A stretch of DNA of 64,000 bases, taken from positions 1 through 64,000 of the IMG/VR virus record IMGVR_UViG_3300046660_000488; one strand, given 5' to 3'. Shown one piece after another: positions 42,137 to 52,205 of the stretch (the stretch's first letter is position 1; each line of letters begins with the position of its first letter). Below the pieces are notes generated by a model. It was not told where the DNA came from, made no database searches, and saw only the letters and a program-made list of their open reading frames with translations. A program made the translations under genes and the position numbers.

Positions 42137-42166
42137 TTGACGAAAACGTCCCACTCAGGATAAATA
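42137..42166 (+). promoter_or_regulatory. promoter of the leader peptide/tRNA-Thr operon
   Basis: TTGACG at 42137-42142 and TAAATA at 42161-42166. Confidence 0.7.
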
Positions 42167-42171
42167 AGAAC

Positions 42172-42213
42172 ATGAACCGGATGACCACACGAACGACAAC
42201 CACCATCGCCTGA
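42172..42213 (+). CDS. Thr-rich leader peptide MNRMTTRTTTTIA (ThrL-like)
   Basis: 6 Thr codons within 7 consecutive codons; near-leaderless; directly upstream of three tRNA-Thr genes. Confidence 0.8.
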   Translation: MNRMTTRTTTTIA

Positions 42214-42261
42214 AGCGCATTCGCGCGCAGGTCTCGATGGTTATTGTGGGTTGTTTCTTGT

Positions 42262-42336
42262 GCCGGTGTAGCTCAGGGGTAGAGCGGAACTTTCGTAAAG
42301 TGATTGTCGGGGGTTCGATTCCCTCCTCCGGCACCA
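42262..42336 (+). tRNA. tRNA-Thr(CGT), atypical
   Basis: Cloverleaf with CCA; loop TT-CGT-AA; U-U in acceptor stem and only 3 Watson-Crick pairs in anticodon stem. Confidence 0.85.
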
Positions 42337-42359
42337 GAAACAACCCACATCCTTGTTCT

Positions 42360-42445
42360 GCCAACGTGGCTCAGTGGCGACAGCACCGGCTTTGTAAGCC
42401 GCCTCCGCAAGGACACCGTGGGTTCGAGTCCCACCGTTGGCTCCA
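42360..42445 (+). tRNA. tRNA-Thr(TGT) with long variable arm
   Basis: GCCAACG/CGTTGGC acceptor, loop TT-TGT-AA, variable hairpin TCC-GCAA-GGA, GTGGG-TTCGAGT-CCCAC, T-CCA. Confidence 0.9.
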
Positions 42446-42458
42446 ACTTTCTTGATAT

Positions 42459-42534
42459 GCTGGCGTGGCACAGTTGGTAGCGCGCTATACTCGTAATATA
42501 GAGGTCATCGGTTCGAATCCGGTCGCCAGCACCA
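42459..42534 (+). tRNA. tRNA-Thr(CGT)
   Basis: GCTGGCG/CGCCAGC acceptor, CTATA-CT-CGT-AA-TATAG, T-loop TTCGAAT, A-CCA. Confidence 0.93.
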
Positions 42535-42939
42535 TCAACTACTCTTTCCTTCAGCATAGCGCACACGCCTAATGTGGCGTCCATTCCCACGGTTCTTGTT
42601 CCGATACGTCGGCGTGAGCGAATGACAGTTGCAGCACAAAAGCCGCAGGTTGCTAAGCGCGTGATTGTCGGCGTTCCCATCCGCGTGGTCAACCTCGACA
42701 TCAACTGGGCGTTTTGTCTGATCCCAAACGCATTCCGGGTCCATGCAGATGTTACCATGCGTAACCAGCATGTATTTGCGTAGGGTCTGTGGATGAACTC
42801 TCACCCCGCTTTTGATTAGCTCGACCGTTGCAGACCACTTGTGTAAACCTTGGCAAGCATTATTACAATACTTACCGTGCGTGTTCTTTTGACGTATTTT
42901 CTCTGTGCCACACTGAAGGCACGTGAATGTTTCAGACAT
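42535..42939 (-). CDS. HNH endonuclease
   Basis: CxxC Zn motifs; VEVDHADGNADNH.LSNLRLLCCNCH. Confidence 0.9.
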   Translation of the reverse strand: MSETFTCLQCGTEKIRQKNTHGKYCNNACQGLHKWSATVELIKSGVRVHPQTLRKYMLVTHGNICMDPECVWDQTKRPVDVEVDHADGNADNHALSNLRLLCCNCHSLTPTYRNKNRGNGRHIRRVRYAEGKSS

Positions 42940-44584: not shown

Positions 44585-45253
44585 ATGCGCTTCTTCCAAC
44601 TCGTTGAAACTCCGACACTTCCCCCAGCCTTCAAGGCGTGGTTCGGGCAGAGCAAGGTCGTGGACGCGAGCGGCCAGCCGCTGCGCGTCTACCACGGCAC
44701 GGAAAAGGACTTCGACGAGTTCGGATACGGCATCCAGCCCGGCGCCGATCAGATCGGCTCAGGTTTCTATTTCACCACCGATCCGGCCGAAGCCAGCGGC
44801 TACGCCGGTGGAAGCCAAGGCGCTCGCGTGATCCCGGCCTATCTGTCGATCCAGAATCCTCTGGACGCGGACAAGGTCGGAACCCTGACGCCCGTGCAGG
44901 CGGCCAAGATCATTCAGATGTCACCGCGTCTGGAGGATGTCTTCGGAGACTGGGACGACGGCTCGGGGAACAAGCGTCAGGTGATGGCGACCATGGCCAA
45001 CACCTACGCCTTCCAGAACGGCAACATCGTCCGGCGTCTGTTCTCGATGGCCAACGACATCTACGGCGACCAGCATGCAGACGCCTTCAACAAGGCGCTG
45101 CATGTCGTGCTCGGCTATGATGGCGTGTTCAAGACGCACGACGACTGCGTCCACTGGGTGGCGTGGTTCCCGCAGCAGGTGAAGGCCGCGACCAACAGCG
45201 GGACATTCGACCCGGCCAACCCCAAGTTCACCGAAGCCTTCAGAAGGCCTTAG
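44585..45253 (+). CDS. ART-PolyVal-like ADP-ribosyltransferase-fold protein
   Basis: TAAATA 4 nt before ATG; FKAWFGQSKVVD..G.PLRVYHGT, GFYFT, ASGYA, VIPAYLSIQNP, GYDGV, P.QVK. Confidence 0.8.
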   Translation: MRFFQLVETPTLPPAFKAWFGQSKVVDASGQPLRVYHGTEKDFDEFGYGIQPGADQIGSGFYFTTDPAEASGYAGGSQGARVIPAYLSIQNPLDADKVGTLTPVQAAKIIQMSPRLEDVFGDWDDGSGNKRQVMATMANTYAFQNGNIVRRLFSMANDIYGDQHADAFNKALHVVLGYDGVFKTHDDCVHWVAWFPQQVKAATNSGTFDPANPKFTEAFRRP

Positions 45254-45476
45254 CGAACGCCTTGACGGCGCGCGCGAAACGCTCCGCGAAGGTTGGGCCT
45301 CGCGGAGGTTTCGGCACGGCGTTGAAGTTACTACCGCCGTTGGAGCCGCAGCACAGGTTGGTGCAGGTGATGTAGCCGTCCGAGCAATTCTCGTCCGCCA
45401 CTTCGGCGTCGGTCTCAAGCTCTTTCCGCATGCCGTCTTCACCGCAGATCGGACAGTTCACCCACACCCTCGTCAT
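45240..45476 (-). CDS. small Zn-ribbon protein
   Basis: CPIC ... CTNLCC. Confidence 0.65.
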   Translation of the reverse strand: MTRVWVNCPICGEDGMRKELETDAEVADENCSDGYITCTNLCCGSNGGSNFNAVPKPPRGPTFAERFARAVKAFAKAF

Positions 45477-47050
45477 TCGATCTCACCCTTCACGGCCCGG
45501 TTCAGCAGGTCGATGGTGTTCTGACGCCCGTAGGCGGCCGTGAACGACCCGAAGCGCGGACCCTGCTCGTCACCGAACAGAACCTCGTACAGGCTCTGGA
45601 ACCATGCCCGCAGGGGCTGGAAATCGTGAGCCTTGCCGACCTCGTAGACCTCGAATTGATAGGCCTCCGGGTCGAGCCCATCAGCCATCTTCTCGAACCG
45701 CTCGACCAGATCGAGGAAGGCCGTGGCCTCCTGTTCGGTCGGGGCGCGTCGCTGGCGATCCTGTAGCAGGATGTCGCGGGCATAGTTGATCGCCCCGTCG
45801 ATCAGAGGGGTCAGGAAGGCCAGATCACCGGCCGACAGCGCCTTGTACTGTCGCAGGTAGGCGATCAGGCTCTCACGATCCTTGGCGCCGGACACCACCG
45901 CCAGATTCAGCAGCAGGCCATAGGTCACGTCGCTGCTGTAAGGCGGCGGCGTATCCCCGTGGATGTGCCAGATCGGCGAGTCGAGCTTGGCCGCGCCGGT
46001 GAGAGCCGGATAGGCGACCAGCGCCTTCAGGTACTCGTCGGTGGCGCGCGGAACCGTCTTGGCCGTGAAAATCTTGGCCTCGCGCGGCTTCAGGAACATG
46101 AAGTAGGCCAGCGGCCCCGTGGTGCTGTAGCGGCTCCACGTCTCCATGCTCATGCCGTTGCCGGACGACTTCGATTGCTTGCGGCCCTCGTCGTCGAGGA
46201 ACAGTTCATAGGTGAACGTCATCGGAGGCTTGCCGCCGATGGCCTTGCAGATGCGCGACGACAGCACGGCGCTGTCCATCAAGTCCTTGCCGTGCATTTC
46301 GTAGTCCACGTCGAAGACGACCCAGCGAGCGGCCCAGTCCACCTTCCACTGAAGCTTGGCGGCGCCTCCGCGCACGTCGATCAGCATGTCCACGCCCGCG
46401 TCGAACGTCGAATCCTTGAAGAACAGGCCGCGTCCGGCGTCGCCGAAGTCCTCAGACGGTCGGACGCTGGCATCGGCCAGCAAGACGCCGGAGTAAGCCA
46501 GCGGCATGAAGGCCGAGTACGTCGCCTTGCGGGCGTCACGCAGGGTCGGGAGCATGATCGCCTGAACAGCGTCGTAGCTGAGCAAGACGCGCTGTAGCAC
46601 GTCGTCGAACACGCCGTTGCGATAGCACTCGGTCGCCGAAATTAACTCGACGTCCTCGAAGCCCGACTGCTCGATGAAAGCCTTCAGCGCCGCGTTGTTG
46701 CGGTGCGCGAAGCTCTCGTACTCACCGAAAGGATCGGGGACCATCGTCAGCGGCTTGCCGAGGTGTTCGGCCATGCTTTCGGGCATGCCGTCCGGAACCT
46801 TGCGGAAGCCGTCGTAGTCGTCGCTGAAGACGATGAGGCGCGTGGCGACCGTGCCGCCCGTCAACTCGATGAAGGCGTCGCGAACCATCTGGGTGCGCGT
46901 GACCTCGCCGAACGTGCCGATGTGCGGGGCGCCCGAAGGACCAAAGCCGGTCTGGAACGTGACCAGCTTCTTGTCACCGACACGCTTCAGCAGAGCACGA
47001 GCCTGCTCGAACGGCCACGACTTGGCGTTCTGCGCGTCAGGATTGGTCAT
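45473..47050 (-). CDS. class I lysyl-tRNA synthetase
   Basis: SWPFE.A, TGFGPSGAPHIGTFGEV.RT, SDD.DGFRKVP, KLQWKVDW..RW, DYEM.GKDL, KQSKSSGNG, GPRFGSF. Confidence 0.95.
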   Translation of the reverse strand: MTNPDAQNAKSWPFEQARALLKRVGDKKLVTFQTGFGPSGAPHIGTFGEVTRTQMVRDAFIELTGGTVATRLIVFSDDYDGFRKVPDGMPESMAEHLGKPLTMVPDPFGEYESFAHRNNAALKAFIEQSGFEDVELISATECYRNGVFDDVLQRVLLSYDAVQAIMLPTLRDARKATYSAFMPLAYSGVLLADASVRPSEDFGDAGRGLFFKDSTFDAGVDMLIDVRGGAAKLQWKVDWAARWVVFDVDYEMHGKDLMDSAVLSSRICKAIGGKPPMTFTYELFLDDEGRKQSKSSGNGMSMETWSRYSTTGPLAYFMFLKPREAKIFTAKTVPRATDEYLKALVAYPALTGAAKLDSPIWHIHGDTPPPYSSDVTYGLLLNLAVVSGAKDRESLIAYLRQYKALSAGDLAFLTPLIDGAINYARDILLQDRQRRAPTEQEATAFLDLVERFEKMADGLDPEAYQFEVYEVGKAHDFQPLRAWFQSLYEVLFGDEQGPRFGSFTAAYGRQNTIDLLNRAVKGEIE

Positions 47051-51044: not shown

Positions 51045-52205
51045 ATGGCTTGAGACTACAGCCATAGAACAACCGATCTTTACCCAAGGGTGTTCTCAAG
51101 GTTGCGGCCCTGAGTTTCTTGGTTATCCACGGCCAGCCCACGTGTTACGGCAGGTCAGGTCGTATCGGTCCGTGTCGCCTTGTTCCTACCTCGCGGTAGA
51201 CGAGTGGCTTTTCTCGCGTCGCTTCATACTACTCGACACTTCCCATCCCTCCTGCTTCGCGGGCAGTTCACGGCTGCAACACCGTTAAGAAATCTTCCGT
51301 ATCGACAAGGGCGACTTTGCCGGTCATTCCCCTGCCCCAATTCTCTTGCGAGTTGGGGATTAGACACTTTTCGTATGAAGCCGGGTCAGGCTTGTGCTTT
51401 TGTTTTGAGGACGGTTTTGACACCGCGACCTACAGCTTGGAAGGCTGTCGCTCTACCACTGAGCTACATCAAATCCACTGGGACGTGCTGACCCGTTGCT
51501 CCATAAGGCTTTCACCCTACAGAATACAACACACCCCGTTCGTTTCATCCTGCTAAGACTACTCCGAGAAACCTTTGGACAACGTGCCTGAGCCCGTCAC
51601 CCTCGATCATGCCGCACGCCCTTTCCCGCTAAGGATCGAACCTTACGACTATCCGTTACTTTCTCCCATGGATGGGTTTGCGTGCCATGGATACCGGGTG
51701 CGAACCCGATTTGAGCTACCTTCCTCGTCGGTTAGGCAACTTCCTATCCCCTCTCGGAGACCCATGACCCCACCTTCCGGAATATCTCCCATCCTCTGGT
51801 AAGGCGTGGAAGACCCTCTCGGGAAGCTCGGACCTGTATAGGTGGACAGCCACCGAAGTGACAGCGGGGTTATGTGGACATACCCCCTTTGAGCCCATTG
51901 CTGGGCCTCATCCTTTACGGCGCTATACCGCCGTTCCGCACCACAAGTGATTACCGTTCCTCTTACGAATACCCGAAGGCATCGTATTTGACCCGGCTCT
52001 GCTTGTGGGCAGATACGCTCAGCACTGTGGATCGTCTTCTTGCGAAGGCCATCCGAAGAAACTAAAGCGCGCCATCCGAAAACGTCGCTACTTCGATCTC
52101 ATCACATGGTCTAAGCGGTCGTTCGAAACCACTTTGCTGCCTCTCGACAGCAGTACCAAGCCACGTCTCCGGAGCGAACCCCGTTGCCGTGCCGATCATT
52201 GACCG
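51045..52205 (-). ncRNA. GOLLD-like giant ncRNA (~1.15 kb)
   Basis: TTGACG-N17-TAAGTT promoter; no coding signal; dense hairpins with GNRA/UUCG loops; embedded tRNA-like element; 3' motifs (GTGTTGTATT...GCAAC, AAAAGTG, GAGTAG, GTGGATAA, GTAGTCTCA) recalled from memory as GOLLD-like, not searched. Confidence 0.6.
51403..51473 (-). tRNA. tRNA-Gly(TCC)-like element embedded in the large RNA (probably not a functional tRNA)
   Basis: Canonical D arm GCTC-AGTGGTA-GAGC and ACAGC-CT-TCC-AA-GCTGT; aberrant T loop; AT-rich acceptor; no CCA. Confidence 0.7.

What the first reader, a model, noticed from the sequence alone, without database searches (positions are those of the whole stretch)
42185..42349. 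Perfect 14-bp clamp around the first tRNA-Thr, competing with the leader's Thr codons
Seen: TGTGGGTTGTTTCT (42245-58) is the exact reverse complement of AGAAACAACCCACA (42336-49). Pairing would extend the acceptor stem, burying the 5' leader near the RNase P site and the CCA end. The same 5' arm can instead pair with the Thr codons: ACAACC 42196-201 with GGTTGT 42249-54, or CCACA 42185-89 with TGTGG 42245-49. This tRNA is also degenerate (U-U in the acceptor, 3-bp anticodon stem). Inference: ribosome position switches the tRNA between processable and clamped states, or tRNA1 serves as a structural part of the switch.
Basis: partly seen in the sequence, partly recalled or inferred. Interest (0 to 1): 0.72.

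Follow-up and report, generated by a model that had tools for sequence, protein, structure and literature searches.

The report
Phage tRNA clamp behind Thr-leader attenuator
The 14-bp clamp is real, but it is one of dozens of conserved leader-trailer stems around tRNA precursors in a clade of huge phages, and the Thr-codon mini-gene upstream belongs to an apparently undescribed set of leader peptides whose amino acids mirror the tRNAs encoded downstream, which suggests these phages switch on tRNA operons when the matching charged tRNAs run short.

Summary
42245-42258 and 42336-42349 are perfectly complementary and continue the acceptor stem of tRNA-Thr(CGU) 42262-42336.

The clamp is not special to this tRNA. 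The window is the start of a 578-kb phage with 69 tRNA genes. Fourteen of them carry the same in-register leader-trailer helix: -1/73 and G-2/C74 paired, a -3/C75 mismatch, then pairs to about -14. Related huge phages have it too, with 32 compensatory changes against 2 one-sided changes between orthologues. Unrelated tRNA-rich phages have none.

The Thr mini-ORF (42172-42213) is also real. In 19 tRNA operons of five related phages, the leader peptide is built from the amino acids of the tRNAs downstream (0 of 20,000 permutations match this). Fourteen of the 19 have a canonical terminator.

My reading has two parts:
- The Thr ORF is a cognate-tRNA-sensing attenuator.
- The clamp is a generic pre-tRNA processing stem that blocks RNase P until it is cut or opened.

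The proposed competition between the 5' arm and the Thr codons is no better than chance, so the ribosome-driven clamp switch remains only a minority possibility. I found no published description of leader peptides in front of tRNA operons.

The parts
42137..42165 (+). Promoter-like site: TTGACG, 17 nt, ATAAAT
   Evidence: Motif TTGACN-N16-18-NTAAAT occurs 15 times in the 578-kb genome, 7 of them directly upstream of tRNA operons. The tool's stricter sigma-70 scan did not call this site.
42172..42213 (+). Leaderless mini-ORF of 13 codons plus stop, with 6 Thr codons (ACC ACA at 42184-42189; ACG ACA ACC ACC at 42193-42204)
   Evidence: The ATG lies exactly 6 nt after the -10 element, as in six other short leaders of this clade. 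Only 12 windows with 6 of 7 Thr occur in the whole six-frame translation.
42202..42241 (+). Stable hairpin whose 5' arm contains the last Thr codon, the Ile and Ala codons and the stop codon
   Evidence: Centroid structure of the leader; -20.7 kcal/mol on its own; kept in the fold of the full precursor.
42242..42261 (+). U-rich tract (12 U of 20, interrupted by G) between the hairpin and tRNA +1. It is a possible weak attenuator tail and contains the clamp's 5' arm.
   Evidence: Sequence. It fails my terminator criterion of 5 T in 8. A related phage has a canonical terminator whose T7 run abuts tRNA +1 at the same place.
42245..42258 (+). 5' arm of the clamp (leader strand of the leader-trailer helix)
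42262..42336 (+). tRNA-Thr(CGU) copy 1, with U6.U67 and a 3-bp anticodon stem
   Evidence: ARAGORN; Rfam 53 bits.
42336..42349 (+). 3' arm of the clamp, starting at A76 of the encoded CCA
42360..42445 (+). tRNA-Thr(UGU), 86 nt, with a long variable arm; no clamp
42459..42534 (+). tRNA-Thr(CGU) copy 2, canonical cloverleaf; no clamp
   Evidence: 63.7 bits.

Best explanation
Two separate devices sit side by side here.

(1) The Thr mini-ORF 42172-42213 is a leader peptide that reports the supply of charged tRNA-Thr. It is one member of a clade-wide family of leader ORFs placed between a strong promoter and each phage tRNA operon. Each is composed of the amino acids whose tRNAs lie downstream. When the cognate charged tRNAs are scarce, the ribosome stalls on these codons and the operon is expressed. 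When they are plentiful, translation runs to the stop codon and expression is cut. In most operons this happens at a canonical terminator. Here it probably happens at the hairpin 42202-42241 plus the U-rich tract, because the hairpin's 5' arm lies inside the ORF and is masked by a stalled ribosome. The operon's own products therefore feed back on its expression.

(2) The 14-bp clamp is a generic leader-trailer helix of the pre-tRNA. It prolongs the acceptor stem to about 21-24 bp. It is conserved by compensatory change on a subset of tRNAs in this phage lineage, and is enriched on tRNAs that are poor RNase P substrates (+1 not G, no encoded CCA). While formed, it hides -1/-2 and the CCA end from RNase P. 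Most likely it is a double-strand processing stem, cut by a host RNase III-type enzyme as with rRNA leader-trailer helices, after which RNase P, 3' trimming and the phage CCA-adding enzyme finish the ends.

Shown: the helix, its covariation, the leader/operon match, and the terminators elsewhere. Inferred: translation of the ORF, termination at the Thr hairpin, and the identity of the nuclease.
For: Clamp family:
- 14 of 69 tRNAs in this genome have at least 13 of 18 in-register leader/trailer pairs, against 0.2% in shifted registers. Relatives: 8/49, 4/41, 4/45, 0/46 and 3/26. Unrelated tRNA-rich phages: 0/58.
- Positions -4 to -14 are 82-100% paired with all four Watson-Crick types. -1/73 is paired in 97% and G-2/C74 in 88%. 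Pairing falls to 58% at -15.
- Seven orthologous tRNA pairs between this phage and its closest relative show 32 double changes against 2 single changes.
- Clamped tRNAs are enriched for +1 not G (odds ratio 5.0, p 6e-5) and for no encoded CCA (odds ratio 6.2, p 3e-5).
- The phage encodes a CCA-adding enzyme.
- Leader/RCCA pairing inhibits E. coli RNase P (PMC9433436).

Leader family:
- Leader peptides match the tRNA set downstream in 19 operons of 5 phages. The operon's own set ranks best in 17 of 19, and 0 of 20,000 permutations reach the observed sum.
- Genome-wide, only 2 windows are as rich in Ser/Cys/Tyr/His, and only 2 as rich in the Ile-cluster set, as the leaders standing in front of those operons.
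- A GC stem plus T-run lies between the ORF and the first tRNA in 14 of 19.
- A segment in the 3' part of the ORF can pair with the terminator's 5' arm better than 95% of shuffles in 7 of 13.
- The leader peptides are conserved between phages with 75% TerL identity.

Thr leader: hairpin of -20.7 kcal/mol overlapping the last Thr codon and the stop codon.
Against: - No RNA data. No RNA run was listed, so transcription start, translation of the ORF, termination and cleavage sites are all inferred.
- The Thr leader has no canonical terminator. Its tail is only 5 U in the first 10 nt. The paralogous Arg(UCU) leader has neither a terminator nor a clamp and folds no better than shuffles, so the short leaders may work differently.
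- No RNase III, RNase Z or splicing-endonuclease domain was found in the phage, and the host is unknown.
- No orthologue of this particular Thr cluster with a clamp was found in the leader-bearing relatives. G002 has a Thr cluster without a clamp.
- Operon sets and ORF choices were made by me, although the same maximisation was applied to the off-diagonal controls.
Confidence: 0.65

Rival explanations
1. The 5' arm pairs either with the Thr codons (ribosome absent) or with the 3' arm (ribosome stalled on the codons). Ribosome position then decides whether tRNA1 is clamped, and maturation rather than transcription is the regulated step.
For: - The MFE of the leader alone pairs 42179-42192 with 42244-42256 around the hairpin.
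- Neither the Thr nor the Arg short leader has a canonical terminator. Both carry a structure ending 3-4 nt before tRNA +1: the clamp arm, or a hairpin over the Arg codons.
- In a relative (G005), the Thr/Ser/Ile/Trp leader has a 9-nt perfect complement between its codons and the G/U-rich tract after its hairpin (read from the sequence).
- Structures next to the cleavage site are known RNase P anti-determinants.
Against: - The leader x arm duplex is at chance level: 42-45% of shuffles do as well.
- The clamp is twice as stable and wins in the fold of the full precursor.
- The centroid of the leader does not contain the alternative pairing.
- Thirteen other clamps in this genome have no leader ORF next to them.
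- The Arg(UCU) leader has no clamp.
Confidence: 0.15
2. The clamp is not a cleavage substrate. It is a holding or protective structure that delays RNase P, orders the processing of polycistronic precursors, shields the ends from exonucleases, or chaperones the folding of weak acceptor stems, and it then simply melts.
For: - E. coli RNase P unwinds short leader/RCCA pairing, and such anti-determinants are proposed to order processing in val operons.
- tRNA1 has a U.U mismatch in its acceptor stem.
- No phage RNase III was found.
Against: - A 14-pair extension is far beyond the 2-3 pairs that RNase P is known to unwind.
- The uniform length of about 21 bp, and the perfect continuous helices on CCA-less genes, look like a double-strand nuclease substrate.
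- Mean acceptor-stem quality is the same in clamped and unclamped tRNAs (6.85 against 6.92 pairs).
Confidence: 0.2
3. tRNA1 is a decaying duplicate or a tRNA-like structural element rather than a working tRNA. The clamp then serves some other role, such as stabilising the leader transcript or ending it.
For: - Three non-standard pairs in the cloverleaf.
- A canonical tRNA-Thr(CGU) with the same anticodon lies 120 nt downstream.
Against: - It scores 53 bits, well above the 29-bit Rfam threshold.
- It keeps the invariant D- and T-loop residues.
- Clamps elsewhere surround normal tRNAs of 14 isotypes.
Confidence: 0.08
4. The repeat is a chance or DNA-level feature: an assembly artefact, terminal inverted repeats of a mobile element, or a recombination site.
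For: An HNH endonuclease-like ORF lies next to the cluster.
Against: - No repeat of 13 bp or more occurred in 5000 random placements.
- There are 33 cases in five genomes, each with its own arm sequence, all in register with the tRNA ends, and changing by compensatory substitution.
- An independent assembly gives the identical sequence.
Confidence: 0.02

Closest known systems
Ribosome-mediated transcription attenuation by leader peptides (trp, his, leu, thr, ilv and pheST leaders of bacteria)
   Same: A short ORF lies between promoter and operon, with clustered regulatory codons. An intrinsic terminator follows. A segment near the end of the ORF can pair with the terminator's 5' arm (principle as described in PMC1183508, listed).
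   Different: - The controlled genes are tRNA genes, not biosynthetic or synthetase genes, so the sensed molecule is the operon's own product.
- Leaders are multi-amino-acid and track mixed operons, for example Ser/Cys/Tyr/His.
- It occurs in a phage.
- A short class is leaderless and, in the Thr and Arg cases, lacks a canonical terminator.
- No report was found in six literature searches.
Leader-trailer helices of bacterial rRNA precursors (RNase III processing stems)
   Same: Sequences flanking a stable RNA pair into a helix of 20 bp or more that brings the two ends together; it is kept by covariation. The concept is as in PMC10250234 (listed).
   Different: - It surrounds single tRNAs.
- It is directly continuous with the acceptor stem.
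- It includes the CCA end.
- Cleavage by RNase III is untested here.
Leader / 3' RCCA pairing and 5'-leader stem-loops as anti-determinants of bacterial RNase P (PMC9433436)
   Same: N(-1) and G(-2) pair with N73 and C74. Two such pairs already lower kcat/Km of E. coli RNase P.
   Different: Here the pairing continues for about 12 more base pairs and is conserved, so it is a designed structure rather than an incidental weak anti-determinant.
T-box riboswitches
   Same: In function, both couple expression of translation-supply genes to the charging state of a specific tRNA.
   Different: T-boxes bind uncharged tRNA directly through RNA-RNA contacts and control synthetase and amino-acid genes. 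Here the ribosome reads codons. No T-box or other Rfam family besides tRNA was found in the window.
tRNA-like leader-trailer interactions in eukaryotic precursors (for example the MALAT1 mascRNA, PMC8457004; yeast pre-tRNA leader-trailer pairing, from my own knowledge)
   Same: Leader and trailer pair to extend the acceptor stem and influence RNase P / RNase Z processing.
   Different: Those helices are short, they are eukaryotic, and they are not linked to translation of a leader ORF.

Membership tests
Leader-peptide (ribosome-mediated) transcription attenuator | Short ORF between the promoter and the first structural gene | tested here: met
   ORF 42172-42213 lies between the promoter-like site 42137-42165 and tRNA +1 at 42262. 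The same layout is seen in 18 other operons.
Leader-peptide (ribosome-mediated) transcription attenuator | Clustered regulatory codons cognate to the operon's product | tested here: met
   6 Thr in 7 consecutive codons before three tRNA-Thr genes. Across 19 operons the own set ranks best in 17, and 0 of 20,000 permutations match the observed sum. Unrelated tRNA-rich phages give only weak matches.
Leader-peptide (ribosome-mediated) transcription attenuator | Intrinsic terminator between the leader ORF and the first gene | tested here: inconclusive
   Met in 14 of 19 clade leaders. For this Thr leader there is only a -20.7 kcal/mol hairpin followed by a G-interrupted U-rich tract, which fails the 5-T-in-8 rule.
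Leader-peptide (ribosome-mediated) transcription attenuator | Alternative (antiterminator) pairing governed by ribosome position | tested here: inconclusive
   7 of 13 canonical leaders have an intra-ORF partner for the terminator's 5' arm at p < 0.05. In the Thr leader the hairpin's 5' arm lies inside the ORF, so direct masking is possible but no separate antiterminator exists.
Leader-peptide (ribosome-mediated) transcription attenuator | Read-through rises when the cognate charged tRNA is limiting | not testable with these tools
   No RNA run was listed; this needs reporter or term-seq experiments.
Leader-trailer processing helix (RNase III-type substrate) | Flanking sequences form a helix of about two turns enclosing the mature RNA | tested here: met
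   Acceptor stem of 7 bp plus a 14-17 position extension with one mismatch.
Leader-trailer processing helix (RNase III-type substrate) | Helix maintained by compensatory substitutions | tested here: met
   32 double changes against 2 single changes in 7 orthologous pairs; all four Watson-Crick pair types at positions -6 to -14. This was shown for the family. No orthologue of this Thr clamp was available.
Leader-trailer processing helix (RNase III-type substrate) | Cleavage of both strands by RNase III | not testable with these tools
   No RNase III domain in the phage; the host is unknown; no RNA data.
RNase P anti-determinant by leader/RCCA pairing | N(-1) and N(-2) pair with N73 and C74 | tested here: met
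   T42261-A73 and G42260-C74. In the family, 97% and 88% are paired. The inhibitory effect is taken from PMC9433436 and was not measured here.

The most novel reading that the evidence does not exclude
In the short, leaderless, terminator-less leaders (Thr here, Arg(UCU) at G000 262143-262209), the regulated step may be maturation of the pre-tRNA rather than transcription. In that reading, a ribosome stalled on cognate codons remodels the structure that abuts the RNase P site, either the clamp's 5' arm or a hairpin over the codons. A tRNA would then be released from its precursor only when that same tRNA species is scarce. This would be a translation-gated RNA-processing switch, with no known precedent that I could find.
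Probability: 0.15. Interest if true: 0.9.

Novelty: new variant of a known kind. Interest (0 to 1): 0.8.

Why it matters
Huge phages carry near-complete tRNA sets, but how and when these are expressed is unknown.

Leader peptides that spell out the isotypes of the downstream tRNAs imply a direct feedback. The ribosome measures the supply of exactly those charged tRNAs and opens the matching operon. This would let a phage compensate for codon-usage mismatch or for host defences that cleave or deplete tRNAs, without constitutive cost.

It would also extend classical attenuation to genes whose products are the sensed molecules themselves.

The conserved 21-bp leader-trailer stems add a tRNA maturation route that is not described for bacteria or phages. 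They occur in a cultured phage (Sinorhizobium phage Phosso), so the route is testable.

Both features are also practical markers for annotating phage tRNA operons.

Tried and rejected
- Neighbour proteins as anchors for orthologous loci led nowhere. The 105-aa ORF upstream, the 386-aa ORF beside the Ile operon and LysRS (one 8-kb contig with a promoter directly before tRNA-Asn) gave no syntenic Thr cluster.
- Exact DNA patterns failed. The tRNA1 3' end hit only unrelated low-GC phages without a clamp. The shared promoter/ATGAAC pattern had no hit in viral contigs.
- Nucleotide similarity to cultured phages covers only the tRNA bodies.
- The built-in promoter/terminator scan missed both the promoter (its -10 rule) and the attenuator terminators (loops over 8 nt). 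I used my own scans instead.
- A second Thr-rich window at G000 92545 is an out-of-frame coincidence inside a long gene.
- A two-sequence consensus fold of the Ser leaders was uninformative because I gave a truncated range.
- Sequencing runs: one DNA run only, and no RNA run listed.
- I considered and rejected a mobile-element or assembly-artefact origin, a phage-encoded RNase III, RNase Z or splicing endonuclease, and archaeal-type bulge-helix-bulge processing (no bulges in the helix; no EndA).

Full report
CONTEXT

The window is the first 64 kb of a 578,292-bp virus record with direct terminal repeats and 59% G+C. A DNA run from a rhizosphere metagenome holds it. ARAGORN finds 69 tRNA genes in the genome, and the phage encodes a CCA-adding enzyme. 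Near the finding are a class I lysyl-tRNA synthetase, an ART-PolyVal protein and an HNH-like ORF. By large terminase, the nearest cultured phages are Sinorhizobium phage Phosso (57% identity) and Agrobacterium phage Atu_ph07 (56%).

THE OBSERVATION

Three tRNA-Thr genes lie at 42262-42336 (CGU), 42360-42445 (UGU, long variable arm) and 42459-42534 (CGU).

The 14-bp arms 42245-42258 and 42336-42349 are perfectly complementary. With the acceptor stem they form 27-nt arms that are 89% complementary. The register is T(-1)-A73, G(-2)-C74, T(-3) x C75, T(-4)-A76, then 13 more pairs.

In 5000 random placements with the same geometry, nothing longer than 12 bp was found. The clamp dominates the predicted fold of the precursor.

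An independent assembly agrees base for base.

THE CLAMP IS A FAMILY, NOT A SINGULARITY

Scanning all 69 tRNAs showed twelve with 9-16 bp of perfect leader/trailer complementarity, against 0.7% of random sites. All share one architecture.

Counted in register, 14 of 69 tRNAs have at least 13 of 18 pairs, while registers shifted by 1-3 nt reach this in 0.2%.

Relatives were found through the terminase and their tRNA regions were fetched:

| Genome | TerL identity | Clamped tRNAs |
|---|---|---|
| G001 | 75% | 8 of 49 |
| G002 | 68% | 4 of 41 |
| G003 | 64% | 4 of 45 |
| G004 | 62% | 0 of 46 |
| G005 | 55% | 3 of 26 |

Three unrelated tRNA-rich phages (XacN1, Atu_ph07, LR756502) have none in 58. 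Phosso, which is cultured, has three, including a tRNA-Thr(UGU) with 17 of 18 pairs.

Over the 33 clamped tRNAs:
- -1/73 is paired in 97%.
- G(-2)/C74 is paired in 88%.
- -3/75 is a pyrimidine mismatch when CCA is encoded.
- -4 to -14 are 82-100% paired, using all four Watson-Crick pair types.
- Pairing drops to 58% at -15.

The helix is therefore the acceptor stem plus about 14 positions, roughly 21 bp. The Thr clamp runs to -17.

Between this phage and G001, seven orthologous tRNAs keep the helix through 32 two-sided changes and only 2 one-sided changes. This is strong evidence for a selected RNA helix. No orthologue of this particular Thr clamp was found.

Clamped tRNAs are enriched for a first base other than G (odds ratio 5.0, p 6e-5) and for lack of an encoded CCA (odds ratio 6.2, p 3e-5). 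Both features weaken recognition by bacterial RNase P. Pairing of N(-1)/N(-2) with the RCCA end is itself a published anti-determinant (PMC9433436).

The phage has no recognisable RNase III, RNase Z or splicing endonuclease, so host enzymes must act. I infer a double-strand processing stem analogous to rRNA leader-trailer helices. This inference is not shown.

THE LEADER ORF IS ALSO A FAMILY

A promoter-like motif (TTGACN, 16-18 nt, NTAAAT) occurs 15 times in the genome, and 7 of these are directly upstream of tRNA operons. Between promoter and first tRNA lie short ORFs whose residues match the isotypes downstream:
- Six Thr in seven codons before the Thr cluster.
- Four consecutive Arg codons, including AGA and AGG, before tRNA-Arg(UCU) and tRNA-Arg(CCU).
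- A run made of Ser, His, Tyr and Cys before the Ser-Ser-Ser-Cys-Tyr-Tyr-His operon.
- An Arg/Leu/Lys/Trp-rich peptide before the Arg-Leu-Met-Lys-Trp operon.
- A 39-residue stretch, 37 residues of which belong to the nine amino acids of the Ile-Val-Gln-Met-Pro-Asn-Ala-Phe-Thr array.

In the whole six-frame translation there are only 2 windows as rich in Ser/Cys/Tyr/His, only 2 as rich in the nine-residue set, and 12 with 6 of 7 Thr.

Relatives show the same thing, and the peptide changes as the operon content changes:
- Val/Thr/Ile before Ile-Thr-Thr-Thr-Val.
- Leu/Gln before a Gln/Leu operon.
- Phe/Lys/Arg/Trp before Phe-Leu-Trp-Arg-Arg-Lys-Lys.
- Tyr/Pro/Met/Cys before Tyr-Pro-Leu-Pro-Met-Cys.
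- Pro/Leu only before a Pro/Leu operon.
- Thr/Ser/Ile/Trp before Ile-Trp-Thr...Thr-Ser-Ser-Ser.

In a 19 x 19 test that applies the same maximisation to every leader/operon combination, the operon's own set ranks first in 17 cases, and no one of 20,000 permutations reaches the observed sum.

A GC-rich stem followed by a T-run lies between the ORF and the first tRNA in 14 of 19. In 7 of 13 of these, a segment in the 3' part of the ORF can pair with the terminator's 5' arm better than 95% of shuffles. These are the hallmarks of ribosome-mediated attenuation.

Unrelated phages, and Phosso and Atu_ph07, show no comparable leaders.

Six literature searches found no description of leader peptides in front of tRNA operons.

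HOW THE TWO MEET AT THE THR CLUSTER

The Thr ORF belongs to a short class in which the ATG stands exactly 6 nt after the -10 element. There are seven such cases, which implies a leaderless mRNA.

Its last Thr codon, the next two codons and the stop codon form the 5' arm of a -20.7 kcal/mol hairpin at 42202-42241. A U-rich but G-interrupted tract, 42242-42261, follows the hairpin and runs up to tRNA +1. This tract contains the clamp's 5' arm.

In G002, the equivalent Val/Thr/Ile leader ends in a canonical terminator whose T7 run abuts tRNA +1. The Thr leader therefore has the same layout with a weaker tail.

A ribosome stalled on 42184-42204 would mask the hairpin's 5' arm. It cannot reach 42245.

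The clamp is -21.6 kcal/mol before stacking on the acceptor stem. The full precursor folds with both hairpin and clamp.

I therefore treat the clamp as a constitutive processing element and the hairpin as the ribosome-sensitive one.

There are caveats. The Thr and Arg short leaders lack canonical terminators. The Arg leader instead has a hairpin over its Arg codons that ends 3 nt before the tRNA. G005's Thr-type leader has a 9-nt complement between its codons and the tract after its hairpin. I give that about 15%.

LIMITS

Everything about translation, termination and cleavage is inferred from sequence. No RNA run was listed, and the host is unknown.

Noticed in passing
window 42360-42445; also G000 104252-104338 (Cys), 508664-508748 and 508998-509082 (Lys), 516221-516306 (Gln), 516932-517019 (Asn): tRNAs for Thr, Cys, Lys, Gln and Asn with long (type II-like) variable arms, 85-88 nt, standing beside normal-length isoacceptors. 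Xanthomonas phage XacN1 annotates similar 86-91-nt Thr, Cys, Asn and Gly tRNAs. Their purpose is unknown.
   Followed up: no
G000 109999-110155 (minus strand), outside the window: Two adjacent tRNAs with a CUA anticodon (amber-suppressor type). G002 and XacN1 have such pairs too. This suggests possible TAG reassignment in part of the phage's genes.
   Followed up: no
window 51403-51473 (-): Rfam calls a tRNA (56.7 bits) that ARAGORN misses. It has a UCC anticodon, an aberrant T-loop, no encoded CCA, and neither a clamp nor a leader.
   Followed up: partly
window 45473-47050 (-) and 44585-45253 (+): A phage-encoded class I lysyl-tRNA synthetase (Pfam E 2e-98) and an ART-PolyVal ADP-ribosyltransferase domain protein lie close to the Thr cluster.
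   Followed up: no
window 42535-42939 (-): A weak HNH-endonuclease-like ORF converges on the end of the Thr cluster, starting right after tRNA3. It may be a homing endonuclease next to the tRNA genes.
   Followed up: no
G000 262068-262238 (minus strand); L029: The Arg(UCU) leader shares 13 identical bases around its -35 element with the Thr leader, and the same ATGAAC start. It is followed by the tRNA, two small protein ORFs (one Cys-rich, 56 aa) and then tRNA-Arg(CCU). tRNAs and mRNAs are therefore co-transcribed.
   Followed up: partly
clamp arms across G000, G001 and Phosso (for example G000 511254, 516748; L112 6569; L133 1698, 5317): Many 5' arms share a core GATGTGCTT / ATGTGTTTT followed by TG-N, and many 3' arms share AAGCACAT, across different isotypes and phages. 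This partial sequence conservation on top of the pairing may be a nuclease recognition element.
   Followed up: partly
L027 (uncultured 642-kb phage LR756502) 6605 and 18999: Weak cognate-looking upstream ORFs: a Tyr/Glu-rich window before Glu/Tyr tRNAs and an Asn-rich window before tRNA-Asn, each at p about 3e-4. These may be distant instances of the leader principle or chance.
   Followed up: no
L016 2310-2350 (8-kb contig with a 56%-identical LysRS): The same TTGACG ... CTAAATAA promoter type stands directly before a tRNA-Asn without a leader ORF, as at G000 517028.
   Followed up: no
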